IMG/VR virus record: IMGVR_UViG_3300042891_000711
Span: 154,903-218,902 of that record
DNA length: 64,000 nucleotides
Direction: 5' to 3' (one strand)
Of the stretch, positions 6,523-62,434 are shown in pieces (the stretch's first letter is position 1; every line of letters begins with the position of its first letter). Made by a program: the position numbers and the translations under genes. Under the pieces are notes generated by a model, which saw nothing but the letters and a program-made list of their open reading frames with translations, was not told the DNA's origin and made no database searches.

Positions 6523-6620
6523 TTATAGATAAAAGGATCGCGTTTACGTAATTCTTTTAATTTTTTACGATAGTTTATTTCTAATCGAATTCTACTGTAT
6601 AAATTCTTTAACCAGTTCAT
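6519..6620 (-). CDS. 33-aa basic peptide MNWLKNLYSRIRLEINYRKKLKELRKRDPFIYK
   Basis: Below the ORF-track cutoff. It bridges the gap between two SGNH genes, and its TGA overlaps the ATG of the next gene (ATGA at 6519-6522). Confidence 0.75.
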   Translation of the reverse strand: MNWLKNLYSRIRLEINYRKKLKELRKRDPFIYK

Positions 6621-7419: not shown

Positions 7420-7420
7420 C

Positions 7421-15045: not shown

Positions 15046-15934
15046 GTGACATTGGGCCTCGGTTTTTAAACACACTTTTGTAGTGATGTTTAAAGAATCT
15101 ACTTTGATCAGCTGTGAAATGTGGAGCAGGTAATCCTAGTTTTACGCTTAATGTATGTGACATTTCACTACATTCTTCTACTAGATTATATACTTTATGT
15201 TGATGCCATATATTGTTTAGTGCATCGAAGTCCTGCACTTCTCTATAATCCCAATCTGTAATCATAGTCATGTATGTGCCTAGTTTAGCACCGTACATGG
15301 CCCAGTCACCGTTCTCTACATCTATGCCCACATTGTGCCATATGCTTAGATGATCATAGTTACGTTCGTGTACACGTTTTTCAAATTCTTGTAGTGTAGG
15401 TTTGGCACCACGATCCAAACACATCTTAACACCTTCTCTAAAGCCAGCTCGCCATGCTTGATAAGGACTTTGATTTGGATATGTTGTGCTGTAGCAATCA
15501 TTCATTGCCCAATATCGTGGATCAAAACAAAACTCAACTGCGGTATCATCTGCACCATCGCTGGCTTCGTGTGTACGCATATTGTTTACAAAATCCTTGG
15601 TCCAGCAACTCATACCACCATTGCCGTACATAAGTCCGTTGATAATGTTACGTGCTTTCCAACGGAATACTACATCTCGATTAGTATCATCCAGTGTAAG
15701 CTGTAGGTTAAAGAACTCTGGATCGGGTAAGTTATCACCATCTATTAATACAAAGCGTTCAGTATCACTTGCGGCGGCCGCGGCTTTATGTGCAGCATCA
15801 CTGCCCTTGACACCGTCTACTCGTTTAGCCCACGGCACCATGTTTTGAATTTTAATCCAAAACTCTTCTTTTTTAGGTTCATCGTAACTTAGGTAGATGC
15901 AGTCTAAATCTGCAATATCAACGATTTGTGTCAT
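15038..15934 (-). CDS. Glycosyltransferase-like protein (GT-A fold)
   Basis: DCIYLSYDEP...AHKAAA...FVLIDGDN (DxD), YGNGG and WRAGFREGVK. Confidence 0.6.
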   Translation of the reverse strand: MTQIVDIADLDCIYLSYDEPKKEEFWIKIQNMVPWAKRVDGVKGSDAAHKAAAAASDTERFVLIDGDNLPDPEFFNLQLTLDDTNRDVVFRWKARNIINGLMYGNGGMSCWTKDFVNNMRTHEASDGADDTAVEFCFDPRYWAMNDCYSTTYPNQSPYQAWRAGFREGVKMCLDRGAKPTLQEFEKRVHERNYDHLSIWHNVGIDVENGDWAMYGAKLGTYMTMITDWDYREVQDFDALNNIWHQHKVYNLVEECSEMSHTLSVKLGLPAPHFTADQSRFFKHHYKSVFKNRGPMSRE

Positions 15935-30300: not shown

Positions 30301-33300
30301 GCCGAACTGTCCGTTAACGGCGCTGACATTGCCTGCAATAACCTGTCCTCGATTCCATACAGTTTCGCCTTCAAGTTTATTATAGGTATAGATTAAACCA
30401 ACATTAGCAGCACCAGCTAAACCAGAACTTGTCGGTGCATTAACTGCTAGACGTACCTGTGTACCATCAACGGCTGTATCGATATGTGAACCATAGGTAA
30501 ATGTGTTTACACCGTCGGGTATTATTGTAGTTGATGTACTATATATGTTTGCAGTATTTTTATCAAATACATTAACTGCACCCGTATTAGTCGAAACAGA
30601 TAAGTTTGCATATAACGTAGTACCAACAAAAATAGTTTGCTCGGCATTATCAATCATTTTTAATGCTCGACCGTAGCCAATGTTTGCAGAATATTCATTA
30701 TTAGTTGTCAATGAAGATACTGTAGTGTTTGCTGGGAATATATTATTAGTACTAACTATCTGACTTGCGCTTACAGAAAAAGCATTTGCACTAGTAAGGA
30801 AATTTGATATAATACCCACAGCATTACCTGTAATAGTTGTGATATTAGTTACAACGTTGCCGCCAATAGTTAATGTACTTGTGGCATTGGCCAATGCTAC
30901 ATTACTAAATGTAATGTACATGTCATTGGTTTTTACCAAGCGTTGATCTATTTCCCATGGATGTGTTTTTTCGTAGACTTTCCATGTGCCACTAGGTTGC
31001 GTACCATATGGTTGACCCTGCACTGCATTAGTTTCGGCATCATCGTCGATCCAAATCTTTTCACCAACTTTCCATTGATGTTTAGGAGAATATAATCGTG
31101 CATCTTCCATGTATTGAAATCGTATGCTATCTAAAATAAACAACATACCGTCGCCATCAAGTGTGGTTAATTGTGTTGTATCACCAGAATATTTGACTAA
31201 TATATTATTGAGGTCAACTATTTCTTCAACTTGGTAGAATCCATCAAATTCTGTAGTAAAACTACGAATTAGGAATATATCGCCAGCGGCCAATCCGTGT
31301 GGATCATCGGTGGTAAATGTCACATATCCATCGAGTGAGTTTGACACCAACAATACATGATTGTTAGTTTCTGATACTCGATAAACATTCCAGTTTTGCG
31401 AAAAGTCTTTTGCACACCATATAGTATATCCAGTACCTATTGCACTTAAAGAATTGTTTAAATCTATAAAATTAGCCAAATCAAATATAGTAGTATCAAC
31501 ATCGTCGATGTTTACATATCCGGCGGTGGCAATATCATTATTATAATCACTAGCTGCATCTCTGTTTAATGCAATAGTACCTGCATATTGTTCAGTTGAT
31601 TTATATAGTTGTGATTTATTAAATGTAGTTACACCGTCACTGCCATCAGCAGTCACAAAAGTAGCAATTGCAGGATTAACCGAAAATGCTTTTTCGTCGA
31701 GTGCAATTTCAACATACGGGTTAGTATCTAACGCACCGTATTCACCCACACGTATTGCCCATTCTTCGTAGAAATTTATAGCACTACTTAAATTGTTAAA
31801 TTCTGCATTTGATAATTGATTAATTGCATTTGCAGAACCTTTTTGTTTAATGAATCCTTTATACAATTCAATTTGTGTAGTGTCACTTAGGCCCAGATCT
31901 GCTAGATATTGACGTGGTTTAAATCCGATTAAGCCGTGACTATATTTGATTTGGTCTGCATCTTTAAAGTTTGTATATGAATCATAATATACCTGCGACT
32001 TAGCAGCTATAGTGGCAAAGTTTGGTAACAACCCCTTTTTAATTTCAGTTGTAGAAATTTGTTTCCAGTAAGCAAATACAAATTCAGTTGTTGCTGCAAC
32101 ATTTTGTAGGGCAACATAATATTGATTTTTATATTGTACCAGATCACCTTTTAAATAATCCTTGCCGCCTTGCCAGGCATCTACATCACCAGAATTATAA
32201 ATAAAGCCCGGAGCACTTAAACTGCCATCCCAATCTGCTGTTTTTTGTCCAATTAATTTTAATCTAAATTGTCTATTACCTAGTTCTGGTTTGTAAATAA
32301 TATCGTTGAACACTGTTGTATTATCAAATATCAATACATGTTCATATTGCACCAAATTTAATTCAATGTAGCCTATAACTGCATCGTTAGTTAATGTCAG
32401 TTTAAAAGCAGTTGGACTACGCAATACGTTATAGTTTGTAGTCTTAACCAGGGCAAAATTTTGATCTAATACTTTAGAACCGTATTGACTATCTGTAATA
32501 GCATCCGTAATTGCGCCAACGGTAACTGCATTTATTACATTAGCCACCGGACTTAGTACCAAGATACTACCAGGTGCCCACCCTTGTTGCGCCCAGAATA
32601 AGAATTCCTTAGTTGATAGTTTCCAATTACGAGTTTCACCAAGTTGTTCATCGGTATCATTGAACGTAAAGCCTTGTGCCATTAAATGTCTTTCGTAACT
32701 AATTAAAAAATCAGCTACTTGTTGTTGAGTATTAAATTCGTAGCCGTATGGCACTGTTAGTTTTAAGTTTTGATAATCTTTAAACACAGTCACTGAATTG
32801 TTTAATACAGTAATTTTATATGCGTTTGTGTTTATAACACTTGGAATAATAGTAAAGTATGGATTGGATAAATTATATCCACGTACACTATACCCGTTTG
32901 TAGTTTTTTCAACAATTACACCGCTGTAGACTATCCTATCAACCGGAGTTGATTTATACAAATGTACATTATAATTTTCATTTGGGATAATAATACTATC
33001 ATTTGTACTAGTCGGTGAACTTTGCTCTGCCAACACCTGCAGATATTTTTGATCACTGAATCCAGCCATTTTATATGCAAGATTAACTTCGTAATTTTTC
33101 AATAAAGGAGTAATAACACTGGCCGGATTAATTCCTTGTTTTACTAAGAAATCCGCAATCCAGTTTATGTAACCTGCTGTCCTAACCGCTGTGCCAGATG
33201 ACGTATCACCATTAAATGTCATTGATGTTTGTTTAATATGATCATTTGTGTCAGTTATGTACTGGTCTAATACGTAATTTTTTGAATAACGTGATACATC

Positions 33301-36300
33301 CATTAATAGGCCAAAGTATCTAGCCGGTTTAGCCAACGCTAGAGCTTGTTGAGCGGCAAATGGGTAATCACTACTGTTGCGCCAGGCAGCTTCAACTGGA
33401 CCTTGTTGCCCTACTGCCCACGATGTTGCGGCTCTAGTGGAGTTAAACGATGCTGTCATAATTGCCGCTGGACTTAATAGTAGTCCATTTACGTCAATTG
33501 GAATAACTGCCGATAAGCCAGGACGAGCAAAATTAGTATCTATACCAGCACGTTCGCCATATTTAATTAAACCTAGTTCTAGGTCGTCCCATAAGAGTTT
33601 GTTACCACCAGTGTAAGGTGCAGGACCGTATTCTTCTACCCACCATGATGGCATTGTAGAGAAGCCCAACATCTCCCACGGAGTTTGATGTGGACGTATT
33701 GTATCGTAGAAGTATTGATAACAGGCTCTCCAGCTGCCAGGTAATATTTCACCGCTAATTCTATCAACGAATCGACCATAGTTCCAAGTAAATGGATCAT
33801 TGCTTTCAAATGTGTCGTTAATTGTAAAATCAATTTTATTATTGCCAATCCAATTTAAGAAATTCTTAGATAATAATTGATTAGCATCAGCCAATGAATA
33901 ATCACCTGTTCTAAATTTTCCTGGCATAACTGCATATATGTCTCGATAACTGCTCGAATCTCTAAGAGTAATGTTGTTGTATATACGCTTTTCTAATTCT
34001 AATATAAAACTATCTCTATAATCTTCAAATGCTGGTGTCATACTGCCATCATGACCACGAATAACATTAATAGGTGTACGATACGTATCGTCTAAAAAGA
34101 TTTCAGGAATAAATTTAGGATATAACCCTAATTTACTCGGAGTTTCTGGCACATACGATCCATTTGTATCTTGATATTCTACAATTTTAACATTATCGTC
34201 GACTTCTAAAGTAACAGTATCCTTAAATGTTATTGCTGGACGATCTGTATCAAATGTATAATCTCTATCTATGATTAACTGTACATCATTTAAATAAACC
34301 AATACCGCAGTATTACCTAAGGCAGTGGCGTCAAATACTGTAGTAATTTCATATGAACGTACCAATGGATCAAATATTGTATAACCTGCACCATTGACAA
34401 TATTTTTTAATGTACCATACGGTATCATGTCACTGTAGAACCACGGGAATGTTTTATTTTTAATCTTGTTAATTTCTGTTAAGATTAAATCAACGCTGGC
34501 CACAGGATCAGTTGGCTGTATGCCCGACAATGTTGCACTCAATTCTAAAAATTTATTTTTAAATCTAGCATATTCTTGTTGTGCATAACGAACAGCGTCA
34601 ATAAAGTTTGTGCTATCGTTTAATAAAAATAATGCTGCATTTGATATCGGTGCACTGTGTTGCAGTATGTTGCCGCCTTGTGATTTAATCTCAATGTCAC
34701 GCAGATTACTTTCACTAAGTATATCACCCACTAACTCGCTGCTATTCTGACTTAGCTCCACTAGATGATTTCTAATTTGTCCCAATGTCAATGATTCTAA
34801 ATCAATGTTTTGTGCATTTAAATCTAAGTTCTGCGGTACTTGATATTGTCCAAGTTTACTTACTTCGAGACTATAAATTAAGATATCAATCTTGTCGCCA
34901 ATCGCTGGTGCAGTGGTCAACGTTAACTCATTATTTGTTAGTGTCCACTGTGTTATGTTCAAGAATGTATTATTTTTATAAACTTTAACATGAGGAACAG
35001 ACGCTGATGCCACAGGAGTAATATCAATTTTAAACGGGCTATTAATACCATTATAGATGTATGTAATTAATTGATACTGTTTAAGTGGTTCAGCCACTGT
35101 ATTCCAATTATTTTTTGGAACTACTGTATTTCTGTCGATGATTTGTTGTAGGAAACCAGTGGCGATTCGATCAGTGTATTCCACTCTATCACGCACATAG
35201 GTAAATGTATCCGTATCAAAGTAGTTAGAAAATTCAATGTCGCCTTGCGCACGGAATGTTCTGTATTTTAATGGAAAGTATAATACTGTATCTGCTACAG
35301 TGCTGGTGCTAGTACGATTATAACCAAATAATCGTGTACCTGCAAATGTACTTGATTCATATTCAGCAAGACGAGTGCCATTGGTGTCATACACATCAAA
35401 CAATGGATCTTGTTGTAGGCTAGTCTTTGTCTGACTTTGTGTCCATGTATCTCCGTTGTACCACCACGCTGTTCCTTTATACAATCCTGTTTTTACTACC
35501 ACAGTATCATAAATTTCGTTATTAGCATCATCTGCAGGATTTAAATTGATATATACCGGTCCCGTTAGTCGCCCAATCTCGTCCAGTTGAGTTTGTACTA
35601 AATTAATTGTATAGATATTATCACGCACCACTGGATCATTATCATTGACAAATATAATTCTCATACCGTCAACTAGTGTAACTCCTCCTACAATAGTTAA
35701 TATTTTTCCATTCAACTCATTAAATGCATCTCGAGTAGTTGTATCTAGTATATCAATTGGTCGTTTACCAATTCTACCAAAATTAAATAATTGTAGATCT
35801 GCTTCAAATTGCACAATTGGACGTTGAGCACGATATGTTTGATCGTATGTAACAACTACATTATTATATTCGGCGGTTAATTTAATCACATCACGGTGAA
35901 ACCAACGATTGCCACGAGACCAAGGATTCAAATCTTTACTACAACGATTAATTGTAATATATTCTGCATTAGACACATTACCTGGCAAGCCATCTGGATA
36001 ATTTAATGCTAGTTCATCATTGTATAGCTCAGGTGTAACTAATAATTCTACATCAATTAGCTGTATTCCGGTTGGTGCCCCTACATTCTCAACATAATAT
36101 TCTTTATTTTGATAAGACGCCGGAGTAACATCGGTACCAAAACTTACCTTTAATCCACTGGTGAATATTACTCCATTAGGGCTAGTATAGTTAGGTGTTC
36201 CTATAATATCATTTTCGACATCAATTTCCCAGCCAGTAATATCAACAAGTTTGATTGTACCGTAAATAGATGGATCACTGCCGTCTTGGAAGTATAGCGT

Positions 36301-37506
36301 ATTTTGTATACTTGAGATTACAGGAACAACATGAAAAAATTCATCATAATCTTTAAAGAACTCTTTATTGGCATTCACAAGTCCAGATTTAATGTACACT
36401 TTTTCATTAAGCAATACATTTTGAACATGCACTAAGCGAATTAATGGATCGTTAATATTGCCTATATCAGTGAACTGCACTTTCCATACGCCGTAACGTT
36501 GGGCATTTGGAATAACTGTACCAGCATTGTATCCAGAAACAACCAACCCGGTGTCCGGATCAATGACTTCGGGCATGGTCCATGCTTCTTCACCACGACT
36601 TGTTAACAGATTTTGGTTTATGAAAATTGCAGTTTTACCATTAAGTTGCCCAGTAATTCCTGCGTATGCTGGAAATTCTGCAAGAAATTGACTAACAGTG
36701 CGATTTTGTATATCTGCATAGGCAAGAGGGACAGCATATTCCACATTAGCTACTACATTCATTAACACATATCGATCTTGTGCTGTTGACTGTGGAACAT
36801 TAAATGTAATTGTACCTGTTTCTGCGCCGTTATTAGTAACGCCAAGTACATCTCGTGTGCTAACTGTCGGAGTTGCATTTACTAATCCATCAACGCCTAA
36901 TTCAGTTTGTATCCAAAATCCGGAGCCAAGTTGATCGACTTCGAACGTATATTGCCCACCACGAGCCAAGGTAATTGTATTTTTTACTAAGCCACCTGTG
37001 GTAAAATCATAACGAGATATGTTTGCGTTACGAGTGACAGTAAATGTTTTTTCTAAGTCGACTCCGCCGGTATTAACATCAACCGGATCTGGTCCATCTT
37101 TAAGCCAGTAGTATTGACTGAAGTTAACAAACTTATCAAAAGAGATTTGCGGATCAAAACTATAGTATTCGCCATCAAATAGTCTGTCATGATTGGCTGT
37201 CAACCCACTGTAGTATTCAATTTTATTTAATATATCATTATAGCCAGCAAAGAATGTAATTTCTTTTTGATCATTGCGAACAACAATACTTGGCTCGAGT
37301 TGATACTTTTGTCTGTCAGCTGAACTTTCAATTACATAGCTGTCTTTACTTTTGTATGTAGGAGCAAATGTTCTTCCAATATAGCCATATATATTTCTCA
37401 AATTTGGTTCAGTTACTAACTGATCCATTGTGGCCGACAAGAACTTATTGTTAACGTCGGTTTGAAATATGGTAGGAAGAAAATTTGAAGTCTTTTTTGT
37501 CGCCAT
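24394..37506 (-). CDS. Giant (4370-aa) baseplate wedge / structural protein with beta-propeller and carbohydrate-binding-like modules
   Basis: Follows the gp6-like gene. It has FG-GAP-like repeats, two W...Y..GD.V.(Y/H) CBM5/12-like motifs and G.GY...P.V.I repeats. Confidence 0.7.
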   Translation of the reverse strand: MATKKTSNFLPTIFQTDVNNKFLSATMDQLVTEPNLRNIYGYIGRTFAPTYKSKDSYVIESSADRQKYQLEPSIVVRNDQKEITFFAGYNDILNKIEYYSGLTANHDRLFDGEYYSFDPQISFDKFVNFSQYYWLKDGPDPVDVNTGGVDLEKTFTVTRNANISRYDFTTGGLVKNTITLARGGQYTFEVDQLGSGFWIQTELGVDGLVNATPTVSTRDVLGVTNNGAETGTITFNVPQSTAQDRYVLMNVVANVEYAVPLAYADIQNRTVSQFLAEFPAYAGITGQLNGKTAIFINQNLLTSRGEEAWTMPEVIDPDTGLVVSGYNAGTVIPNAQRYGVWKVQFTDIGNINDPLIRLVHVQNVLLNEKVYIKSGLVNANKEFFKDYDEFFHVVPVISSIQNTLYFQDGSDPSIYGTIKLVDITGWEIDVENDIIGTPNYTSPNGVIFTSGLKVSFGTDVTPASYQNKEYYVENVGAPTGIQLIDVELLVTPELYNDELALNYPDGLPGNVSNAEYITINRCSKDLNPWSRGNRWFHRDVIKLTAEYNNVVVTYDQTYRAQRPIVQFEADLQLFNFGRIGKRPIDILDTTTRDAFNELNGKILTIVGGVTLVDGMRIIFVNDNDPVVRDNIYTINLVQTQLDEIGRLTGPVYINLNPADDANNEIYDTVVVKTGLYKGTAWWYNGDTWTQSQTKTSLQQDPLFDVYDTNGTRLAEYESSTFAGTRLFGYNRTSTSTVADTVLYFPLKYRTFRAQGDIEFSNYFDTDTFTYVRDRVEYTDRIATGFLQQIIDRNTVVPKNNWNTVAEPLKQYQLITYIYNGINSPFKIDITPVASASVPHVKVYKNNTFLNITQWTLTNNELTLTTAPAIGDKIDILIYSLEVSKLGQYQVPQNLDLNAQNIDLESLTLGQIRNHLVELSQNSSELVGDILSESNLRDIEIKSQGGNILQHSAPISNAALFLLNDSTNFIDAVRYAQQEYARFKNKFLELSATLSGIQPTDPVASVDLILTEINKIKNKTFPWFYSDMIPYGTLKNIVNGAGYTIFDPLVRSYEITTVFDATALGNTAVLVYLNDVQLIIDRDYTFDTDRPAITFKDTVTLEVDDNVKIVEYQDTNGSYVPETPSKLGLYPKFIPEIFLDDTYRTPINVIRGHDGSMTPAFEDYRDSFILELEKRIYNNITLRDSSSYRDIYAVMPGKFRTGDYSLADANQLLSKNFLNWIGNNKIDFTINDTFESNDPFTWNYGRFVDRISGEILPGSWRACYQYFYDTIRPHQTPWEMLGFSTMPSWWVEEYGPAPYTGGNKLLWDDLELGLIKYGERAGIDTNFARPGLSAVIPIDVNGLLLSPAAIMTASFNSTRAATSWAVGQQGPVEAAWRNSSDYPFAAQQALALAKPARYFGLLMDVSRYSKNYVLDQYITDTNDHIKQTSMTFNGDTSSGTAVRTAGYINWIADFLVKQGINPASVITPLLKNYEVNLAYKMAGFSDQKYLQVLAEQSSPTSTNDSIIIPNENYNVHLYKSTPVDRIVYSGVIVEKTTNGYSVRGYNLSNPYFTIIPSVINTNAYKITVLNNSVTVFKDYQNLKLTVPYGYEFNTQQQVADFLISYERHLMAQGFTFNDTDEQLGETRNWKLSTKEFLFWAQQGWAPGSILVLSPVANVINAVTVGAITDAITDSQYGSKVLDQNFALVKTTNYNVLRSPTAFKLTLTNDAVIGYIELNLVQYEHVLIFDNTTVFNDIIYKPELGNRQFRLKLIGQKTADWDGSLSAPGFIYNSGDVDAWQGGKDYLKGDLVQYKNQYYVALQNVAATTEFVFAYWKQISTTEIKKGLLPNFATIAAKSQVYYDSYTNFKDADQIKYSHGLIGFKPRQYLADLGLSDTTQIELYKGFIKQKGSANAINQLSNAEFNNLSSAINFYEEWAIRVGEYGALDTNPYVEIALDEKAFSVNPAIATFVTADGSDGVTTFNKSQLYKSTEQYAGTIALNRDAASDYNNDIATAGYVNIDDVDTTIFDLANFIDLNNSLSAIGTGYTIWCAKDFSQNWNVYRVSETNNHVLLVSNSLDGYVTFTTDDPHGLAAGDIFLIRSFTTEFDGFYQVEEIVDLNNILVKYSGDTTQLTTLDGDGMLFILDSIRFQYMEDARLYSPKHQWKVGEKIWIDDDAETNAVQGQPYGTQPSGTWKVYEKTHPWEIDQRLVKTNDMYITFSNVALANATSTLTIGGNVVTNITTITGNAVGIISNFLTSANAFSVSASQIVSTNNIFPANTTVSSLTTNNEYSANIGYGRALKMIDNAEQTIFVGTTLYANLSVSTNTGAVNVFDKNTANIYSTSTTIIPDGVNTFTYGSHIDTAVDGTQVRLAVNAPTSSGLAGAANVGLIYTYNKLEGETVWNRGQVIAGNVSAVNGQFGYGFAFDELGHWLYVGAPYESTPKVYVYGLKRFVTEANGTVTTSGSVSSITVPFTPEVTDDANSLVVTSATRTYIPNIDYTLSGTTITFISGNVNDTLTISQGPYYALIGDPTDPLYPLVGPAGSEFGFCIDASLNGAQLGVGAPADTVNVAVFSDGITTVDRSIPVGTNTASITVDGNVLPRISYVENVSAGAVYVYDRVIEAFNSTNGTVYTTEGNIAPVHAVTVDDIETFNYTKTGANEITLFVPLGVGKNVKIETNQFTLLEKLIGVDSLGGSLSAIQQGARFGTSLTICSNNCAFYIGAPFYNADTVYNTGAVWKFHNKGTLYGINRGFTKNPTFTPGDTIRLDNFQITVQPLHNDPITGLPMSSLDSLIKDINDAKLLGITAVNENGYLRLDSDKTVAKNRLRVLSGSGAVYADAGLAIFAFMQIIVNPYSSNNEYFGTKVILARNAYMLVISSDGGTTNTFTTFDSDTTVIDDDSTPFVDSVKASGSVYTYELYDDPRDMVEHPGRYAFCQQLNPTDLNTGDGFGAAIDIIGGHIIVSAPSDDTITNLTLSTAVTVRAGDIITQKASDNIRYIVSADATASTNITVSPAGTDHFVTGTVIVDGVEVVYPIWINGVATSTYINNVVENTGSIYLFNNTINKRGWSLIRYQQPTVDIESVNRMYLYSNLSNTILTTLEFIDPAKGKILGRADQEISYKTGYDPAVYNRGTNSAVSLNDTIFWNGEQVGQVWWNLSQLSYIDYEQDTLTYRSINWGRLFPGSTVELLEWVESDYLPSAYVANGGEGIPKYADDSAYVELVYVDQVTNIISIKYFYWVKDKTTVDLNNETRRLPIAAIKDIIENPKNQGTPYAAIIQNNAFVVYNVGSYLSAKNTILHLDYNTVKNTNIIHSEYELVEKGNANSIISPKIINKLIDSLAGIDILGAEVPDPALSQADKFGLGTRPRQAIFADRFAAYANLVDYANSILITKPIARNCDLTTISSAEAQPNIKLGEYNLKIATEIELQYLDVSVLAVGYKVLVNQDTTRDNLWVLYELSTTKIWEIIRIQSYKTDLYWEYVDWYAPGYGTDTQLEYVVETLTDALKLPVAVGEEVLVRVSTGNSRGWNLLVLNSNNQFDVVGIQDGTIQLKTSSGNFINNTTPTTEVRYIINALKDDIFVGELDTEFNKLFFVMINYLFNEQKYVDWIFKTSFISVSHKLRSLLQYPNYIKDNQTYYENYITEVKPYSTKIREYSINYDSNDEFAGSVTDFDLPAYYDTETKVFRSPSGENVIKDEALWQTDTYNQWYANRNHRVENIIVEYGGSGYTAEPIVTIVGGGLAATGATARAIIDFDLGTVTSIEILTRGTGYFLTPTVLINGTNTTPATAYAVLKNNQVRTFDTTLKFDRISYTSSVQEWTANTAYTVGDIVTHVGSLAGAVRHAFIVTANITSGSTFVHTDDYTEYNSANFTTANDRIVGYYEPGASMPARDLNQLLRGIDYPGVRVQGLGFDQAPGFSGATPFDTGLFDQIQYDADGLPLLDDATVDTIIQSNYTDLALGTRAEDIDVVGGAYVDTYSSHAPEEMVPGIVFDTLDMQVYTKINSNVDVIAYRMFSNMMREESYLRIADAHATTLAAPLGLTDTEIVVADASKLAEPFMDAIGIAQISIPGVVFINGERITYYTRDLITNTLGQIRRGTQGTATPVIQYAGAVVTDGSVDQIVPGTVSNVVLSTTTPYTVTSTRSYYLSLTESITANVGDVITQTASGASLTVAGIDSVARVLLVVRNNSNSLTFQDNYLKLSGNVTVSSGDYITQSSTGANVTVLTTGANVSNVEVSYYGITTLNTGRASGNIAINGSNVAVYPTTITGNITLNSEIIINGTNTGNVYPLSIVPVGRNDNGIPFVDNNGNVTIAANIELHTTNVWYNLGSGVATDGTGFDGSTTVPVTFLKGSTATNIVITAIKDMITTEDAVNTLTTEDSKTIIED

Positions 37507-53925: not shown

Positions 53926-54446
53926 AAATTGCAATCACAGGACATAGTCGAGGAATCGGGTTAGCAATAGCTAATCAGTTAAATCAGCATGACATAATTG
54001 GCTTAAGTCAAACCAATGGATATGATATTGCTAATATTTCTCAAATTATAAATGCAGTGCGTGATTGTGATGTATTCATTAATAATGCGTATTGTGATTA
54101 TTATCAGACTGAATTACTCTCAGCATTATATTTAGAATGGCAAGATCTTAATAAGATTATTGTTAATATCGGCAGTACCAGTACTGCATACCCGCGCACC
54201 GAAGCTGCATTAAATGATCTACCTTGGCCGTATAGAGATCATAAGATAAGTTTAGAAAAAGAATTTAGAAAATTAGCATGGCAAGGCGCTAACTGTAGAC
54301 TTGCATTGATAAATCCCGGCGCAATAGATACCGATATGATGCGAGCACAAAACTGTATTAAATTAAATCCTATAGAAATTGCCAAAGCTGTAGAAATAGT
54401 ATTAACTAATCCTTATATTAAAGAGATGACAGTTTATGCAAAATAA
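53922..54446 (+). CDS. Short-chain dehydrogenase/reductase (compact)
   Basis: TGHSRGIG, FINNA, NIGS, YRDHK (YxxxK) and PG.IDT. Confidence 0.85.
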   Translation: MKIAITGHSRGIGLAIANQLNQHDIIGLSQTNGYDIANISQIINAVRDCDVFINNAYCDYYQTELLSALYLEWQDLNKIIVNIGSTSTAYPRTEAALNDLPWPYRDHKISLEKEFRKLAWQGANCRLALINPGAIDTDMMRAQNCIKLNPIEIAKAVEIVLTNPYIKEMTVYAK

Positions 54447-55557
54447 GTATGGATTTCAGTTATACCATTGGCATCTTGAACCAAGTAGTCGTTGTACATT
54501 ACGTTGTCCTCGCTGTCCTCGTGAAGAAATGGGCGGTGATATACCATGGCTTAATAAAGATATCACTTTAGAATTATTTAAAAAAACATTTACAGAAGAA
54601 TTACTTAAAACACAGGTTAAACGTATTACTATGTGCGGTGATGTCGGCGATCCAATTTATTGCCATGACTATTTAGATATATGTGAATATATTAAAACTA
54701 CTAACCCTGATATACATATCTATACTATCACTAATGGCAGTTATAAAAAACAAGATTGGTGGGAACGCTTTGGTAATATATTAAATGAACGTGACACTGT
54801 AGCATTTAGTATCGACGGATACGATAACGATAGTAACAATTTATATAGAGTCAATAGTAACTGGGACAGTATAATTACCGGTGTAACTACGTTAACTAAA
54901 TTAAAAAGAGCTTATGTAACCTGGGCTGTAATTGTATTTGCATTTAATCAAGATCAGCTAAAACTAATAGAAAATATAGCACGTGACGCAGGATGCGATA
55001 GTTTACAGGTTACTAAAAGTATAAAGTTTGGTAGTCGATTTAATAGTTACAATACAACAGATAGCACAGACGAATTAGAACCGAGGCCGGAGTTTGTTAG
55101 TCAAAGTGGTCGTTACGAAAGATATAGTGTTCAATTAAGTAATCGTCGATTTGATAATGCTGACTATATGCAGACTAATTTAATACAGTGGAAGAATACA
55201 GTTAATACCTATAAAGATGATTATGTAATTCCACTTTGTTTAATTGGTAATCGTGGATTGTACCTAAATGCGGCTGGTCAATTATACCCATGCAGTTGGG
55301 TAGCGGCTCCTCACAAAGGTAGACATAGTCCTATTACAAATAAAACATTGAAATTAGAAGACAGCTTGTTTAGGAAACACGAAGACTTATTTAATCTGCA
55401 TACTAGGTCATTAGAGGAAGTATTAAATGACCCAGTCTGGGAAAAGTTATTTGATAGTTGGCACAAAAAAGAAGATGCATTTATTGAATGTGAAGAAAAA
55501 TGCAATAACTGTGCAGTCAGTCAAGAAAATTACAGTGTAGGATATTTAACAAATTAA
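54436..55557 (+). CDS. Radical SAM protein with C-terminal twitch/SPASM-like domain
   Basis: CTLRCPRC, GDVGDP, TNG and FSIDG; C-terminal C...LYLNAAGQLYPC...CEEKC. Confidence 0.88.
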   Translation: MQNKYGFQLYHWHLEPSSRCTLRCPRCPREEMGGDIPWLNKDITLELFKKTFTEELLKTQVKRITMCGDVGDPIYCHDYLDICEYIKTTNPDIHIYTITNGSYKKQDWWERFGNILNERDTVAFSIDGYDNDSNNLYRVNSNWDSIITGVTTLTKLKRAYVTWAVIVFAFNQDQLKLIENIARDAGCDSLQVTKSIKFGSRFNSYNTTDSTDELEPRPEFVSQSGRYERYSVQLSNRRFDNADYMQTNLIQWKNTVNTYKDDYVIPLCLIGNRGLYLNAAGQLYPCSWVAAPHKGRHSPITNKTLKLEDSLFRKHEDLFNLHTRSLEEVLNDPVWEKLFDSWHKKEDAFIECEEKCNNCAVSQENYSVGYLTN

Positions 55558-55611
55558 TTTGCCACCCACTACAAGGCGGTTAAATACACATAACAACAAG
55601 GAGAAGTAAAC

Positions 55612-55797
55612 ATGTCAATTCATGAAGATATTTTAGCAGCAGTAGAATTATACGTATCAGAATCAGAGAAATTTGAAGTTAAGGGTGTTAAGGCCGCAGC
55701 GGCACGTGCTCGTGGTGCATTGGGCGATTTAGGTAAATTAACTAAAGCCCGTCGTGCAGAAATCCAAGAGAAGAAAAATGCAGCGGCTGCAAAATAA
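55612..55797 (+). CDS. Small basic histone H1/Hc1-like DNA-binding protein
   Basis: EKFE.KGVKAAAARARGALGDLGKLTKARRAEIQ; TAAATA late promoter (55581) and AAGGAG SD upstream. Confidence 0.65.
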   Translation: MSIHEDILAAVELYVSESEKFEVKGVKAAAARARGALGDLGKLTKARRAEIQEKKNAAAAK

Positions 55798-55804
55798 ATA
55801 ACGT

Positions 55805-56245
55805 ATGACATACGACTTTCCCTGGATCTATAATGGTACACCTTTTGATTCAGGGGATATCGGTGAATACTATGGTTTCATTTATAGAATAACCAATCTT
55901 ACTAACGGCTACGATTATGTGGGCCGTAAGTATTTCAAAACTATTAAGAAAAGACCACCACTAAAAGGCAAGAAGAACAAACGTCTAGAAACAATCGAAA
56001 CTGATTGGAAAGACTACTGGGGTTCGTCAAGTCGATTAGTAGCAGATATATTAGAATTAGGCAAAGAACAGTTTACTCGCGAAATTATACACTTGTGTAA
56101 GAGTCGCGGTGAAACAAATTACATGGAAGCGTACTATCAATTTACAGAAGGTGTACTGTTGAAGGAAAATAACTACAACGGTATCATACAAATTAAACTT
56201 GGCAAGGGTTCCGTAAAAGATTTAATAATTAATAAAAACAGTTGA
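55805..56245 (+). CDS. GIY-YIG endonuclease (single catalytic domain)
   Basis: GFIYRITN..NG..YVG, YWGSS, FTREII, E, and YN. Confidence 0.85.
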   Translation: MTYDFPWIYNGTPFDSGDIGEYYGFIYRITNLTNGYDYVGRKYFKTIKKRPPLKGKKNKRLETIETDWKDYWGSSSRLVADILELGKEQFTREIIHLCKSRGETNYMEAYYQFTEGVLLKENNYNGIIQIKLGKGSVKDLIINKNS

Positions 56246-56270
56246 CCAACGACACTAAACGTATTACAAT
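56242..56270 (+). promoter_or_regulatory. Sigma70 promoter facing an ORF-free region
   Basis: TTGACC (56242-47) - N17 - TACAAT (56265-70). Confidence 0.75.
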
Positions 56271-56276
56271 AAACAC

Positions 56277-56840
56277 ACAGCTCCTAGACACCAAGTCACT
56301 CTCATAGAAACAAATTCCAACTCCGTAGTAAAGTAGTAAATGTTTTAACAGCCCTATTGCAGATTAAGTTCTGTATTCAGAGGAGATCGTGCTCGCGTAA
56401 TGGCCGCACGTGGAACGTGTAGACTAGACTACACACTGAATGGCGACCGTGTATTGTGCTATAAAAAGCGAATCAACAATATAAAAATTAGGTGTAAAAA
56501 CCGAATGATTTGGGCACTGTGAAAAAGATACAACCCATATGATGACATAGTTTGGCTAACTACGGATTATGCATCAACCGTCGTAAGAAGCAAGAGTAGG
56601 GAGTACAGGGCGACCGCTTCCGTGTAAATGAATATAATCTCTTTTAGTTAGTATGATGAAGCACTCGGATGAAGTCGCTCTGTTTTACTTTGCCTTTAGT
56701 GGGTGAAGTATGACTATAATCTGGATGAAGCAGTTCTAAAGTCAAAAGCATTACAGTACATAACAAAGTAAATTAGATTAATTAGATTAGAAGAAAAAGC
56801 ATGAGCGCAAGCGAAATGCGAATGTCTTTAGACATTCTTT
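56277..56840 (+). ncRNA. Candidate large structured non-coding RNA (or primer-RNA / origin region)
   Basis: No ORF of 60 aa or more, an upstream promoter, many stems with G-U pairs and two long loop-to-distal complementarities (see findings). Confidence 0.6.
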
Positions 56841-56901
56841 AAATGTAGTTAATTGTCTTTTGCTCTTATAATGACTTTGATAGACGTATGTTATAGTCAA
56901 T

Positions 56902-56925
56902 AAAAAAGCACAATAAATGTGCTTT
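56902..56925 (-). terminator. Intrinsic terminator for the gp26/gp51-like genes (possibly bidirectional)
   Basis: AAAGCACA-ATAAA-TGTGCTTT hairpin with an A run on the left, just past the stop at 56930. Confidence 0.65.
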
Positions 56926-56929
56926 AGTA

Positions 56930-57148
56930 TTAAAAAAATGGAAGTCCGCTTTTTTGTGTAGTTTCCATATTATCTTTAATAATCTTTCCGATAATATCTC
57001 TTTCTTGCTGTGTTAAAAACATTGCATCTTCATAACTTAAACCACCCCGCATATACCAACACATACGTAATGCTTCTTCTCTGAAGGCTTTTGACTCTTT
57101 ATCGTAGGAATCAAGCAGTTCTACGATGGCATCATTATCTAGGGTCAA
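56930..57148 (-). CDS. Small baseplate hub assembly protein (gp51-like)
   Basis: CWYMRGGLSYEDA..L...ER; ATGA-coupled to the gp26-like gene. Confidence 0.55.
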   Translation of the reverse strand: MTLDNDAIVELLDSYDKESKAFREEALRMCWYMRGGLSYEDAMFLTQQERDIIGKIIKDNMETTQKSGLPFF

Positions 57149-57999
57149 AAGCCTCGAGCGAAAAAACTTGCGTAATCGAAATCAATGGATAATTTAAATT
57201 CATTTGAGCATTCAGTACACACTACGTCGACTGGTTTAATACTAATTGATTTAGACAGTTCTTCAATTGTTTGTTGTACTGTGCGTATTACAGTTGATTC
57301 GGAATTTGTGTAGTACTCTCTAATAAATTTTGTATCTGATACAACGTCGCCATCTTCTGTCGTAATCGCCGCAGTACAATTAGATATAGTTTCGATGTTT
57401 AATTCAACCATTTTATTAATATGTTCATTGTATTTGACTTTTCTAACGTCTGCGTCAAGATCGGGATCTGCTAGTGTCTGGATTAACTTTTCTTCTTCAA
57501 ACACAGTATTACCAGATTTACTAATTTGAGCGTAAGTTAATGGTTTAAGACTAACAGACAACCCGTCTGATAATTCCACAGTCTTTGAATAATCTGGCAT
57601 TGATACAGAACCTAATGTAGCAGTTAAGTCTACATCATAATCATGTTCCGTACCGCATTGTGGGCAAGTCGATCCTATGGCCATTGTAGGACCATAACTA
57701 GCAATACGAATAGCAATCAATGTAGTGTCTACATCTACGCTGGGCATATCCCACGCATTTTTAATATTTGGGCAGCAACTCTGAATAACATCAACGACGC
57801 TTGTACCACTGATCAACGCATCTGGTGTGCGTAATGTAATTTCGTCTCTGGTAGTCATTGGATATACAGGTAGTTCGCCTGTTACTGGTAGTTCTAATGA
57901 ACCCTCTTTCCAAAACTTTCCTTCGCTAGTTAACTTGATATACAGCGCAGGTTGGCGAAAGTGTTTAGCTAACGGATTTGCGTTATTGATTTGAGCCAT
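57145..57999 (-). CDS. Baseplate hub subunit / assembly protein (T4 gp26-like)
   Basis: NPL..HFRQP, MT.RDEI, IAIRIASYG and two CxxC motifs. Confidence 0.75.
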   Translation of the reverse strand: MAQINNANPLAKHFRQPALYIKLTSEGKFWKEGSLELPVTGELPVYPMTTRDEITLRTPDALISGTSVVDVIQSCCPNIKNAWDMPSVDVDTTLIAIRIASYGPTMAIGSTCPQCGTEHDYDVDLTATLGSVSMPDYSKTVELSDGLSVSLKPLTYAQISKSGNTVFEEEKLIQTLADPDLDADVRKVKYNEHINKMVELNIETISNCTAAITTEDGDVVSDTKFIREYYTNSESTVIRTVQQTIEELSKSISIKPVDVVCTECSNEFKLSIDFDYASFFARGF

Positions 58000-58057
58000 G
58001 GTTTTATTTCCTATAAATATAATTGATATACTGTATATTTATAGGTTAAAACCATGG
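57996..58057. promoter_or_regulatory. Palindromic pair of opposing TATAAATA late promoters
   Basis: TATAAATA on + at 58012-19 and on - at 58036-43, embedded in 12-bp and 11-bp perfect inverted repeats. Confidence 0.8.
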
Positions 58058-60686: not shown

Positions 60687-60694
60687 TATAAATA
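60687..60694 (+). promoter_or_regulatory. T4 late promoter TATAAATA for the portal gene
   Basis: Exact consensus 25 nt upstream of the portal ATG. Confidence 0.8.
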
Positions 60695-60719
60695 CACTAT
60701 CGTAAAGAGAATATAACTA

Positions 60720-62434
60720 TGTCATGGAAAAAACATTTCCGAACTGCAAACACTGGTGGACAACTAAGTCCAATTAGTGGTATTAACAATTCAGCAGATC
60801 CGAGCTATCGTAACTATCAAAGCCAATTACCTGAGGTATATATCGGCCATCCAAATCGTACTGAACGTTATAATCAATATGAGCAGATGGATATGGACAG
60901 TGAAGTTAATGCTGCACTTGATATTATTGCAGAATTCTGCACACAACCAAATACAGAAAATGGCACAGGCTTTGATTTATTCTTTAAAGAAGATCCAACA
61001 GATAACGAAGTTAAATTACTTAAAGATCAACTGCTACAGTGGGTTAATCTAAATCAATTAAACAAACGTCTATTCAAACTTGTACGTAATACATTAAAAT
61101 ACGGTGATCAAGTATTCCTACGTGATCCAGAAACATTCAAATTATACTGGACAGAAATGGGCAGTGTAATCAAAGTTATTGTTAATGAAGCAGAAGGCAA
61201 AGAGCCCGAGCAATACGTAATTAAAAACCTTAATCTTAACTTTCAAAACTTAACTGCTACTGCATTAAGTTCGAGCGATACCTACACAAATCACCCGCAA
61301 CAAGGCGGTAGTGGTGGCGCAGGTTCCTATGTACAACCTAACGTACCTTACAGTGGCGGTTCACGTTTTAGTCATGCTCAAAACGAAGCAGTATTAGATG
61401 CAGAACATGTAGTGCATATCAGTCTGACAGAAGGTCTAGATGTAAACTGGCCATTTGGTACTAGTATTCTTGAAAGCATATTTAAAATCTTTAAACAAAA
61501 AGAATTGTTAGAAGACGCTATTATTATCTATCGTGTGCAACGTGCACCGGAACGTCGTGTATTTAAAATTGACGTAGGTAACATGCCTACACACATGGCT
61601 ATGGCCTTTGTGGATCGCATTAAAAATGAAGTACATCAACGTCGTATTCCAACACAAACTGGTGGTGGACAAAATATGATGGATGCTACATACAATCCAT
61701 TAAGCACAAACGAAGACTTTTTCTTCCCAGTAGGCGCAGAAGGCCGTGGATCGAGCGTTGAAGCATTGCCAGGCGGTAGTAACCTGGGTGAAATTACAGA
61801 CTTACGTTTCTTTACTAATAAAATGTTCCGAGGTTTACGTATTCCTAGTAGCTACTTGCCTACAGGCAGTGATGATAGTTCATCTACATTTAATGATGGC
61901 AAGTCAACTACTGCATTAATTCAAGAATGGCGCTTTAATCAATACTGTATGCGTTTACAAACTATGATAGTTGAAAAACTAGACAATGAGTTTAAAATGT
62001 TCATGCGTTGGAGAGGTATTAACATTGATGGTCAGCTATTTGAACTACGCTTAAACGAACCACAAAACTTTGCCAAATATCGTCAAGCAGAAGTAGATGC
62101 GGCACGTATACAAGCATTTACATCATTAGAACAAACACCATACCTAAGTAAACGTTTCTTATTAGAGCGTTACTTAGATCTAAGTGAAGAAGAAATGCAA
62201 CGCAATGATGAATTATGGGCAGAAGAGCATAATGATACTCCGAATCCTGGAGATACTGATGTTGGATTACGTGCAATTAACGTTACACCAGCGGGGATTG
62301 AAAGCGATATGAGTAATTTAGAAATGCCCAACTTAACCGCAGAACCAGCACCTGGAGTAGAACCGGGTGCATTACCTGCAACGGGTGCTGCACCAGCAGT
62401 ACCAGAAACGCCTGCTGCACCTCCTGGTTTATAA
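60720..62434 (+). CDS. gp20: Portal protein (T4 gp20-like)
   Basis: EVNAALDIIAE, LEDAIIIYRVQRAPERRVFKIDVGNMP, EDFFFP, LPGG.NLGEI.D and L.IP.SYL. The ORF track gives 60719..62434. Confidence 0.95.

What the first reader, a model, noticed from the sequence alone, without database searches (positions are those of the whole stretch)
56242..56840. Candidate large ornate ncRNA with two pseudoknots downstream of a GIY-YIG nuclease
Seen: the only long ORF-free gap (~680 nt) in a densely coding window begins with TTGACC-N17-TACAAT. Stems found by eye: TGCAGA/TCTGTA (56358/56370); ATTCAG/CTGAAT (56375/56436) enclosing CGTGC/GCACG and GTGTAG/CTACAC; TATTGT/ACAATA (56452/56476); TGGG/CCCA (56511/56534); TGATG/CATCA (56540/56572); AAGAG/CTCTT (56592/56639) enclosing GGGAGT/GCTTCC; and TACTTTGCCT/GGGTGAAGTA (56686/56701, several G-U pairs). 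Two loops have distal complements: CTAACTA (56556-62) with TAGTTAG (56645-51), and ACAGGGCGAC (56605-14) with GTCGCTCTGT (56674-83; 10 bp, one G-U). GATGAAG recurs three times (56654, 56668, 56725). G-U tolerance points to plus-strand RNA structure. Inference: this is a multi-domain RNA in the size class of phage GOLLD/ROOL RNAs that I cannot assign to a known family. It could be a ribozyme, a scaffold, a partner of the adjacent minimal GIY-YIG protein, or a replication primer.
Basis: partly seen in the sequence, partly recalled or inferred. Interest (0 to 1): 0.85.

Follow-up and report, generated by a model that had tools for sequence, protein, structure and literature searches.

The report
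New large structured jumbo-phage RNA
The gap holds a real, roughly 500-base non-coding RNA gene with two pseudoknots, shared by hundreds of uncultured aquatic giant phages and matching no catalogued RNA family; its function is unknown, and it keeps two short sequences identical to each other while they change between phages.

Summary
Window 56339-56854 (+) is a single-copy, conserved, non-coding structured RNA. Single-sequence folding is not significant (z -1.3). No Rfam 15 family matches the window or 20 homologues. No tRNA, tmRNA or intron signature is present, and there is no conserved ORF or codon periodicity. The RNA occurs in at least 120 IMG/VR and at least 120 metagenome contigs, mostly lake water, in none of 185,579 species genomes, and is not detected in cultured relatives. 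It always lies between the SbcC-side genes and the convergent p72/baseplate-hub operon. The GIY-YIG gene is a facultative neighbour, absent from 14 RNA-bearing loci, and most likely a homing endonuclease parked beside a conserved RNA gene. Freshwater metatranscriptome contigs cover the Hc1-GIY-RNA stretch. One feature is unexplained: two 7-9 nt sequences about 56 nt apart (56667-74, 56723-30) are identical in 162 of 165 homologues across about 20 variants, with no complementary partner nearby. Function is unknown. My best guess is a trans-acting scaffold with twin docking sites.

The parts
56242..56270 (+). Sigma-70-like promoter TTGACC-N17-TACAAT, inside a clade-specific insert of about 100 nt (56246-56345). 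It is not a family feature.
   Evidence: Scored 10/12 but is one of 10 hits where 9.2 are expected. The insert is present only in the window's close relatives. An RNA-library contig variant skips 56229-56350. In most relatives helix H0 starts 3-20 nt after the upstream stop codon.
56350..56445 (+). 5' domain, type A. Helices: H0 56351-53/56442-44, H1 56359-63/56370-74, H2 56375-80/56436-41, H3 56388-92/56406-10, H4 56417-22/56429-34. Conserved joints are GAGGAGAU and UGGAAC.
   Evidence: Alignment A2 (35 sequences): 98.4% paired vs 78.2% shuffled, 18/25 pairs change on both sides, slid controls 24-45%. Distant homologues carry a different 5' domain with a CCCAUUGAG...UUGGG motif.
56452..56481 (+). 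Clade-specific extra hairpin TATTGT/ACAATA.
   Evidence: Present only in the window's clade; most homologues have a short linker here.
56491..56502 (+). Hairpin H5 (GGU/ACC).
   Evidence: 82% paired and all 3 pairs change on both sides (helix 1).
56503..56655 (+). Invariant core. Helices: H6 56510-14/56534-38 (plus 56518-19/56531-32), H7 56540-44/56572-76, H8 56546-52/56565-71, H9 56593-96/56639-42, H10 56599-604/56616-21, H11 56623-26/56633-36. 38 positions are invariant, including AGAGUAGGG.GUAC.GG...ACC.C.UCC and A.UCUCU.
   Evidence: Alignments A1 and A3. Covariance model R1 scores 150.6 bits here and finds 93 hits in 100 sources, one per locus.
56556..56562 (+). Pseudoknot 1, 5' strand (H8 loop, CUAACUA). 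It pairs with 56645-56651.
   Evidence: All 7 pairs change on both sides. Examples: CUGACUA/UAGUCAG, CUAAUCA/UGAUUAG, GCAAUUA/UAAUUGC, UCUAUUC/GAAUAGA.
56645..56651 (+). Pseudoknot 1, 3' strand (UAGUUAG).
56581..56584 (+). Pseudoknot 2 (revised), 5' strand UCGU. It pairs with the H10 loop at 56610-56613.
   Evidence: Three pairs are 100% paired with types CG50/UA36, AU48/GC37 and GC44/AU32/CG4/UA4, on a model alignment that did not include this helix (helix 6).
56610..56613 (+). Pseudoknot 2 (revised), 3' strand GCGA in the H10 loop.
56660..56679 (+). Hairpin Hx, whose 9-nt loop UC+X shows copy X1 (GGAUGAAG, 56667-56674).
   Evidence: A local hairpin encloses X1 in 164 of 168 homologues. Mean dG is -4.1 vs -2.0 kcal/mol with the 3' flank shuffled.
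56686..56710 (+). Hairpin H12 between the two X copies.
   Evidence: 96.4% paired and 5 pairs change on both sides (helix 11).
56723..56730 (+). Copy X2 (GGAUGAAG) after a conserved AUCU. It is mostly single-stranded.
   Evidence: The first 7 nt of X1 and X2 are identical in 162 of 165 homologues across about 20 variants. The top covariation scores are identity pairs 56667/56723, 56671/56727 and 56673/56729. A local hairpin encloses X2 in only 67 of 168.
56735..56798 (+). Poorly conserved A-rich linker of variable length, ending in the motif UAGAnUAGAA.
56799..56837 (+). Two 3' hairpins. H13 is 56799-802/56816-19 with tandem G-A, GC/GC and a GNNA loop (conserved GAGCGnnAGCGA). H14 is 56820-26/56831-37.
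   Evidence: Helices 13-16 covary. The nhmmer match to the window ends at 56854. No U-tract follows H14.
55805..56245 (+). Neighbour, not part of the RNA: a SegE-type GIY-YIG endonuclease gene of 146 aa.
   Evidence: Pfam PF19835, E 2e-36. Upstream of the RNA in 149 of 163 loci with enough sequence and absent in 14. Shows codon-phase periodicity, so it is a live gene.
56905..56925 (-). Boundary, not part of the RNA: intrinsic terminator of the convergent p72/baseplate-hub operon.

Best explanation
Shown by the data:
- 56339-56854 (+) is a stand-alone gene for a structured non-coding RNA of about 500 nt. It belongs to a clade of uncultured aquatic jumbo myophages.
- Its parts, 5' to 3', are: a replaceable 5' domain; a nearly invariant 150-nt core locked by two pseudoknots; a module Hx-H12 that presents two copies (X1, X2) of one 7-9 nt purine-rich sequence; an unconserved linker; and two 3' hairpins.
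- It is not tied to the GIY-YIG gene.

Inferred:
- It is transcribed on the tail of the upstream late operon. A T4-late-like TAAATAC motif lies before the Hc1-like gene. The window's clade may also use its own sigma-70-like promoter.
- It acts in trans as a folded scaffold. The rigid core positions X1 and X2 as two equivalent docking sites, read by base pairing by one partner nucleic acid encoded elsewhere (phage or host).
- This would explain why the two copies must stay identical while their sequence drifts between phages.
- The GIY-YIG gene, and in some relatives a NUMOD3 endonuclease, are homing endonucleases that have settled at the 5' edge of a conserved RNA gene. From my own knowledge, segB sits in the same way in the T4 tRNA cluster.

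Confidence by tier: a real new structured RNA family, above 0.95; independent of GIY-YIG, about 0.9; the twin-docking mechanism, about 0.35.
For: - Conservation: 67-100% identity in about 90 loci at first pass, and an nhmmer hit in 215 of 221 loci.
- Covariation: all with 0/500 shuffles reaching the observed score and slid controls far lower.
- Single copy in the window, and one hit per locus.
- Non-coding: no codon periodicity (phase entropies 0.90/0.88/0.92, against 0.64/0.52/1.20 in the GIY gene) and no conserved ORF.
- No Rfam family, tRNA or tmRNA.
- Distribution: at least 120 IMG/VR and at least 120 metagenome contigs, and 0 in species genomes.
- Fixed synteny next to p72/hub with a variable upstream neighbour.
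- RNA-library contigs span about 55560-56990. In run X16, depth is 159 there against 36, 10 and 0 on the hub side.
- Late-promoter-like motifs.
- X1 equals X2 in 162 of 165 homologues, where about 13% is expected from variant frequencies. All 8 combinations of the three variable positions occur, and the distant L024 has UGCGAAUAG twice.
- X1 lies in a hairpin loop in 164 of 168.
- No complementary partner is found in the RNA, within +-1.5 kb, or in neighbouring genes.
- Identical p72 or Hc1 proteins occur with different X variants, which argues against those two proteins as readers of X.
Against: - No partner for X has been found, so docking by base pairing is an inference from the identity pattern alone.
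- X2 is not consistently in a hairpin loop, so the two sites are not structurally equivalent.
- Strand, ends and abundance of the transcript are not established. Only unstranded assembled contigs were available, the runs were chosen because they hold this stretch, and DNA carry-over cannot be excluded.
- Most relatives have no room for a separate promoter, so a purely cis role as a 3' UTR is not excluded.
- Nothing shows that the RNA is stable or acts in trans.
Confidence: 0.45

Rival explanations
1. X1 and X2 contact each other, within one RNA or between copies in a homo-oligomer, through same-with-same base pairs (G-G, A-A, U-U) in parallel register. The RNA would then be a self-assembling architecture like GOLLD, ROOL or OLE rather than a docking platform.
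For: - Covariation is strictly identity at a constant offset: GG52/AA47, GG61/AA37, UU50/AA48.
- No complementary partner is found anywhere nearby.
- A change then needs only two mutations, as in an ordinary base pair.
- OLE dimers contain a conserved helix of four A-A pairs between chains, and GOLLD and ROOL are held together by loop-loop bridges (PMC12286853).
- The layout of conserved core, variable 5' region and unconserved linker resembles GOLLD and ROOL.
Against: - From my own knowledge, no mixed-sequence parallel same-with-same helix is known in a natural RNA at neutral pH.
- Several X variants contain C, which would need protonation to pair with itself.
- Oligomerisation is untested.
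Confidence: 0.15
2. It is a cis-acting 3' UTR element of the upstream late operon. It would stabilise or process the mRNA, or insulate two convergent transcription units.
For: - RNA-library contigs run without a break from the Hc1-like gene through GIY-YIG into the RNA.
- In most relatives H0 begins 3-20 nt after the upstream stop codon.
- It lies between convergent operons and ends in hairpins.
Against: - The RNA is kept unchanged while the upstream gene is swapped for GIY-YIG, a NUMOD3 endonuclease, a radical-SAM enzyme or a PDDEXK nuclease.
- 38 invariant positions, two pseudoknots and the X1=X2 rule are far more than a stabiliser or terminator needs.
Confidence: 0.15
3. It is a ribozyme, for example one that cuts itself free from the upstream mRNA or cleaves at the two identical X sites.
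For: - Many invariant unpaired nucleotides sit in a double-pseudoknot core.
- Co-transcription would require a release step.
- RNA-library contigs end at 56652, 56664 and 56668 in three runs.
Against: - There is no match to any Rfam ribozyme family.
- The contig ends fall at strain-variable positions (A/G at 56653, and the variable Hx stem). They therefore look like assembly-graph breaks, not RNA ends.
Confidence: 0.1
4. X1 and X2 are the matched ends of a template that is copied repeatedly. A polymerase reaching one copy re-anneals its product at the other, as at the ends of telomerase or DRT2 templates. Alternatively the RNA primes replication.
For: - Identical direct repeats flanking a hairpin-containing unit of fixed size, 51-64 nt, are what template realignment requires.
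- The DRT2 ncRNA gives concatemeric cDNA (10.64898/2026.09.22.753630).
Against: - No reverse transcriptase was found among the roughly 30 window ORFs scanned.
- The 56-nt unit has stop codons in all frames on both strands (my reading of the sequence).
- There is no evidence of repeat products.
Confidence: 0.05
5. It is a guide or cofactor RNA for the adjacent GIY-YIG nuclease.
For: - The two are adjacent in 149 of 163 loci.
- X looks guide-like.
Against: - 14 loci have the RNA, with X1 equal to X2, but no GIY-YIG gene.
- Genes are inserted between the two in several loci.
- L025 has a GIY-YIG homologue but no detectable RNA.
- X does not covary with the only recurrent complementary site in the GIY gene.
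- The protein is a SegE-type homing-endonuclease domain.
Confidence: 0.04

Closest known systems
GOLLD RNA (Rfam RF01998) and ROOL RNA (RF03087)
   Same: Encoded by phages; 500-800 nt; several pseudoknots; a conserved region joined to a less conserved region; an unconserved linker; function unknown; found in lake and other environmental metagenomes (PMC12286853).
   Different: No sequence or structure match. No tRNA genes in the 64-kb window. The host phages are uncultured jumbo myophages and the position beside the baseplate-hub operon is fixed. The X1=X2 twin element has no reported counterpart. Oligomerisation is untested.
OLE RNA
   Same: Large, ornate, with highly conserved unpaired nucleotides. 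Its dimer uses a helix of A-A pairs, a precedent for same-with-same base contacts.
   Different: OLE is bacterial, works with membrane proteins and is unrelated in sequence. Its A-A helix joins the same loop of two chains, not two different sites of one RNA.
Free-standing Seg homing endonucleases beside RNA genes (T4 segB in the tRNA cluster; from my own knowledge)
   Same: A GIY-YIG endonuclease gene sits next to conserved structured-RNA genes, is present or absent between relatives, and has other endonuclease genes at the same spot.
   Different: This explains the neighbour, not the RNA. No cleavage site was mapped.
Lambda-type nut/boxB hairpins and Csr/Rsm sponge RNAs (from my own knowledge)
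   Same: Two or more copies of one short loop sequence in one transcript, kept alike because one partner reads them. About half of the X variants contain GGA in a hairpin loop.
   Different: The partners there are proteins with a fixed motif. Here about 20 variants occur, GGA is not conserved (AGAU, ACAGAAA, GCGAAUAG and others), and the copies sit in a 500-nt pseudoknotted RNA.
Group I introns carrying GIY-YIG genes (T4 td / I-TevI)
   Same: A GIY-YIG gene next to a large structured RNA in a T4-like phage.
   Different: No intron model match. No exons: the upstream ORF ends in a stop codon and nothing is coded downstream on the + strand. The pseudoknot topology does not fit P3/P7.

Membership tests
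GOLLD (RF01998) / ROOL (RF03087) | Match to the family covariance model. | tested here: not met
   No hit at gathering score in the window. None at E<=10 on 56100-57000. None at E<=5 in 20 homologues.
GOLLD / ROOL | Frequent location beside tRNA genes in phages or prophages. | tested here: not met
   ARAGORN finds no tRNA in the 64-kb window. The neighbours are SbcC-side genes and p72/baseplate hub.
GOLLD / ROOL | RNA-only homo-oligomeric cage. | not testable with these tools
   This needs native gels or cryo-EM.
Group I / group II intron | Match to intron models, and flanking exons that join into one gene. | tested here: not met
   No model match. The upstream ORFs end in stop codons and there is no + strand ORF downstream.
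tmRNA | tRNA-like domain plus a tag reading frame. | tested here: not met
   ARAGORN finds none and no Rfam tmRNA family hits.
Nuclease guide RNAs (HEARO/omega RNA type) | Obligate linkage to its nuclease gene. | tested here: not met
   14 loci have the RNA without the GIY-YIG gene. There is no IscB or TnpB gene nearby and no Rfam match.
Csr/Rsm-type sponge RNA | Conserved GGA in repeated hairpin loops. | tested here: not met
   The first base of X is G in 52 and A in 47 of 101 sequences. Distant variants lack GGA.
The new family defined here | Core match to model R1 at 70 bits or more; pseudoknots 1 and 2; X1 equal to X2 around hairpin H12; location beside the p72/baseplate-hub operon. | tested here: met
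   The window scores 150.6 bits. Pseudoknots. X copies: (identical GGAUGAAG at 56667 and 56723). Synteny.

The most novel reading that the evidence does not exclude
The RNA carries a programmable twin element. Two copies of one 7-9 nt sequence must stay identical, for one of two reasons. Either they pair with each other same-with-same in a parallel helix, which would be a structural motif not yet seen in natural RNA. Or they jointly read one external nucleic acid, which would make this a sequence-addressed RNA scaffold of jumbo phages.
Probability: 0.3. Interest if true: 0.9.

Novelty: new variant of a known kind. Interest (0 to 1): 0.78.

Why it matters
Only a handful of large, intricately folded bacterial and phage RNA classes are known, among them GOLLD, ROOL, OLE, raiA and HEARO. 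Each has led to unexpected biology, such as RNA-only cages and guide RNAs.

This is a further such class. It has an unusually clean comparative signal: over 160 distinct sequences, two proven pseudoknots and 38 invariant core positions. It is widespread in lake viromes and present in metatranscriptomes.

The rule that two sequences must match each other by identity rather than by complementarity is not what ordinary RNA folding produces. It points to a specific partner or a new kind of contact, and that is directly testable with paired mutations.

The locus also shows homing endonucleases using a conserved RNA gene as a landing place.

Tried and rejected
- BLAST against 50,697 deposited phage genomes, near and distant modes: no match.
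- Model R1 with filters off on the syntenic loci of the cultured relatives Phosso, Atu_ph07 and RaK2, and on L025 and L026: nothing significant. The best was 11 bits in Atu_ph07, at the right place and strand but unconvincing in alignment.
- Search for a partner of X. No complementary column within the RNA. No recurrent complementary site within +-1.5 kb. The one recurrent site, in the GFIY codons of the GIY-YIG gene, does not covary with X. No enrichment in neighbouring genes on either strand. No enrichment of the motif in the window beyond the RNA.
- p72, Hc1 and GIY proteins as readers of X. Identical p72 and Hc1 proteins occur with different X variants; the GIY comparison had no power.
- A helix between X1 (RGAU) and the AUCU before X2 appears in minimum-energy folds. 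It does not explain the identity rule, because the best combination, A at 56667 with G at 56723, is never seen.
- Contig ends at 56652-56668 as evidence for RNA processing: rejected as unsafe, because they coincide with strain-variable positions.
- Rapid evolution of X: rejected. No pair with a backbone at least 96% identical differs in X, and X changes no faster than the backbone.
- A local hairpin around X2: found in only 67 of 168 homologues and 47.6% paired in the alignment (helix 12).
- Literature: no description found among the papers searched. The 2023 survey of phage structured RNAs reports motifs averaging 67 nt, and its supplementary files are not held here, so partial overlap cannot be excluded.
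Full report
**What the window is.** The 64-kb window comes from a jumbo myophage.
- It has a T4-type portal (60719-62434), baseplate genes, an SbcCD-like nuclease pair and a 4370-aa ORF.
- The nearest deposited phages are Atu_ph07, the PA5oct group and Phosso, at only about 50% portal identity.
- The gap 56246-56929 lies between + strand genes and a convergent - strand operon. The + strand genes are SbcC, a 174-aa ORF, a radical-SAM enzyme, an Hc1 histone-like gene and a 146-aa SegE-type GIY-YIG gene ending at 56245.
- The - strand operon is a 72-aa ORF called p72 here (56930-57148) plus baseplate hub (57145-57999). Its terminator is at 56905-25.

**Checking the observation on the sequence alone.**
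- Folding the single sequence is not convincing: z = -1.31 on the + strand and +0.11 on the - strand.
- The promoter-like site is no more than chance gives.
- Rfam 15 gives nothing at gathering threshold for the whole window and nothing relevant at E<=10 for the region. ARAGORN finds no tRNA or tmRNA.

**Relatives.**
- Searches with the baseplate-hub and GIY-YIG proteins fetched 106 IMG/VR loci.
- BLAST of the gap shows window positions from about 56345 to 56853 conserved at 67-100% identity in about 90 of them.
- A DNA pattern from the most conserved block found at least 120 more IMG/VR loci and at least 120 metagenome contigs. The contigs are mostly lake water, with some estuarine, marine and TARA samples.
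- The same pattern found nothing in one genome for each of 185,579 bacterial and archaeal species.
- A profile HMM hits 215 of 221 loci, once each, and hits the window once at 56339-56854.

**It is non-coding.**
- Substitutions show no codon phase: entropies are 0.90/0.88/0.92, against 0.64/0.52/1.20 in the neighbouring GIY-YIG gene.
- The median longest ATG-ORF is 37 aa.
- The window's 40-aa ORF is intact in 7 of 101 homologues.

**Structure of the 5' domain (56350-56445).** On a structure-blind MAFFT alignment of 35 sequences, five helices are 98.4% paired, against 78.2% after shuffling. 18 of 25 pairs change on both sides, and slid controls give 24-45%.

**Structure of the core and 3' part.**
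- The test used a structure-blind alignment of 51 representatives, each under 93% identical to the others.
- The full structure is 84.3% paired vs 72.5% shuffled. The covariation score is 0.345 vs 0.145, with 0/500 shuffles as high and slid controls at 0.06-0.08.
- Helices H5, H6, H8, H11, H12, H13 and H14 covary.
- H9 (AGAG/CUCU) and most of H10 are invariant.
- G-U pairs fixed in all sequences place the RNA on the + strand.

**Pseudoknots.**
- Instead the H10 loop (56610-13) pairs with 56581-84 just upstream, forming an H-type pseudoknot.
- I built covariance model R1 from the nested helices of the core only. It finds 93 full-length hits in 100 sources at 72-167 bits. These include the distant L024 at 72.5 bits.
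- On the resulting alignment, which knows nothing of the pseudoknots, all 11 pseudoknot pairs change on both sides. They are 84% paired vs 69% shuffled, and three pairs of the new pseudoknot are 100% paired.

**Architecture across the family.**
- Distant members replace the 5' domain with a different one (CCCAUUGAG...UUGGG type). They keep the core, the Hx-H12 module and the 3' hairpins.
- The window's clade has two private additions: a roughly 100-nt insert carrying the sigma-70-like promoter, and the TATTGT/ACAATA hairpin.
- A poorly conserved A-rich linker precedes the 3' hairpins.
- A conserved core, a variable 5' region and an unconserved linker also describe GOLLD and ROOL (PMC12286853).

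**The twin element.**
- The highest covariation scores in the RNA are not base pairs. They are identities between positions 56 nt apart: 56667/56723 (GG 52, AA 47), 56671/56727 and 56673/56729.
- The 7-9 nt after a conserved ACUC (X1, 56667-74) equal the 7-9 nt after a conserved AUCU (X2, 56723-30).
- The first 7 nt are identical in 162 of 165 distinct homologues, and the other three differ at one base. About 13% identity is expected from the variant frequencies.
- All eight combinations of the three common variable positions occur (R-GAU-R-A-W).
- Rarer members carry GACGAA, GUCGAAAG, AUGGGAA, ACAGAAA or AGAUCAA. The most distant member, L024, has UGCGAAUAG twice.
- X changes no faster than the rest of the RNA.
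- X1 lies in the 9-nt loop of a covarying hairpin in 164 of 168 sequences. X2 is usually unstructured.
- I found no complementary partner in the RNA, within 1.5 kb, or in neighbouring genes on either strand.
- Identical p72 or Hc1 proteins occur with different X variants.

**Relation to the GIY-YIG gene.**
- Of 163 RNA loci with at least 2.5 kb upstream, 149 have the gene upstream on the same strand and 14 do not.
- In those 14, the RNA follows a PDDEXK nuclease gene or other genes after SbcC.
- In L034, L046 and L048 a NUMOD3 homing-endonuclease gene is inserted between the GIY-YIG gene and the RNA. In L101 a radical-SAM gene is inserted there.
- The 3' neighbour, p72 plus baseplate hub, is constant.
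- So the RNA is the anchored, conserved element, and its 5' edge is a landing place for endonuclease genes and other cargo.
- From my own knowledge, this is the usual behaviour of free-standing homing endonucleases, for example segB among the T4 tRNA genes.

**Expression.**
- The stretch is held by at least 14 lake-water DNA metagenomes and by six freshwater metatranscriptome runs.
- I laid four RNA libraries from three studies on 55000-58000. Their contigs cover about 55560-56990 (Hc1-like gene, GIY-YIG, RNA).
- In run X16, a single 1550-nt contig has depth 159.5, against 35.7, 9.5 and 0 toward the hub gene.
- A T4-late-like TAAATAC motif lies just before the Hc1-like gene. It resembles the CTATAAATA found before the portal, hub and 876-aa genes.
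- This fits late co-transcription, but the contigs are unstranded. The runs were chosen for holding this stretch, and DNA carry-over is not excluded.
- Contig ends at 56652-56668 coincide with strain-variable positions. I do not read them as RNA ends.

**Cultured relatives.** Synteny (portal, tape-measure-like gene, hub, then gp46) is kept in Phosso, Atu_ph07 and RaK2. The model finds no RNA there, so no laboratory system is at hand.

**Interpretation.**
- This is a new family of large structured phage RNA.
- I commit, with modest confidence, to a trans-acting scaffold whose rigid double-pseudoknot core presents two equivalent sequence-specific docking sites for one partner nucleic acid.
- The main rival is direct same-with-same pairing of X1 with X2, within or between molecules. 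OLE's A-A helix is a partial precedent.
- Cis-acting 3' UTR, ribozyme, template-realignment and GIY-YIG-cofactor readings are less likely, for the reasons given under each rival.
- No description of this RNA turned up in the literature searches.

Noticed in passing
window 24394-37506 (-): A single ORF of 4370 aa inside the structural gene block, followed by ORFs of 1127, 712 and 1052 aa. Not analysed.
   Followed up: no
window 4518-15075 (-): A run of genes for a carbamoyltransferase and at least four radical-SAM/SPASM enzymes. A further radical-SAM/SPASM gene lies at 54436-55557 (+). This looks like a modification or peptide-maturation cluster in a phage.
   Followed up: partly
window 55612-55797 (+): A 61-aa protein matching the chlamydial histone H1-like Hc1 family (Pfam PF07432, E 6e-9). 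A late-promoter-like TAAATAC precedes it, and it is the best covered gene in the RNA libraries.
   Followed up: partly
window 58000-58053: A divergent late-promoter region with CTATAAATA on both strands (58012 + and 58036 -) in a near-palindrome between the hub and the 876-aa gene. The same motif lies before the portal gene at 60687.
   Followed up: partly
L034:3571-4269 (also L046, L048): A 232-aa NUMOD3-motif homing-endonuclease gene inserted exactly between the GIY-YIG leader and the 5' end of the RNA gene.
   Followed up: partly
L342:5724-6737 (Sinorhizobium phage Phosso, record 229759-230772): An unannotated 1-kb gap near the syntenic position in the closest cultured relative. Model R1 finds nothing there and I did not examine it further.
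   Followed up: no
window 56695-56700, and the H12 loop in relatives: In most relatives the H12 loop reads CGGAU, echoing the CUCGGAU context of X1. It does not covary with X.
   Followed up: partly
window 56593-56600 and 56783-56792: The motif UAGAGUAG / UAGAnUAGAA recurs in the core (cUAGAGUAGGG in most relatives) and at the end of the linker. The H4 loop has UAGAnnAGACUA. This may be a repeated protein or tertiary-contact motif.
   Followed up: no
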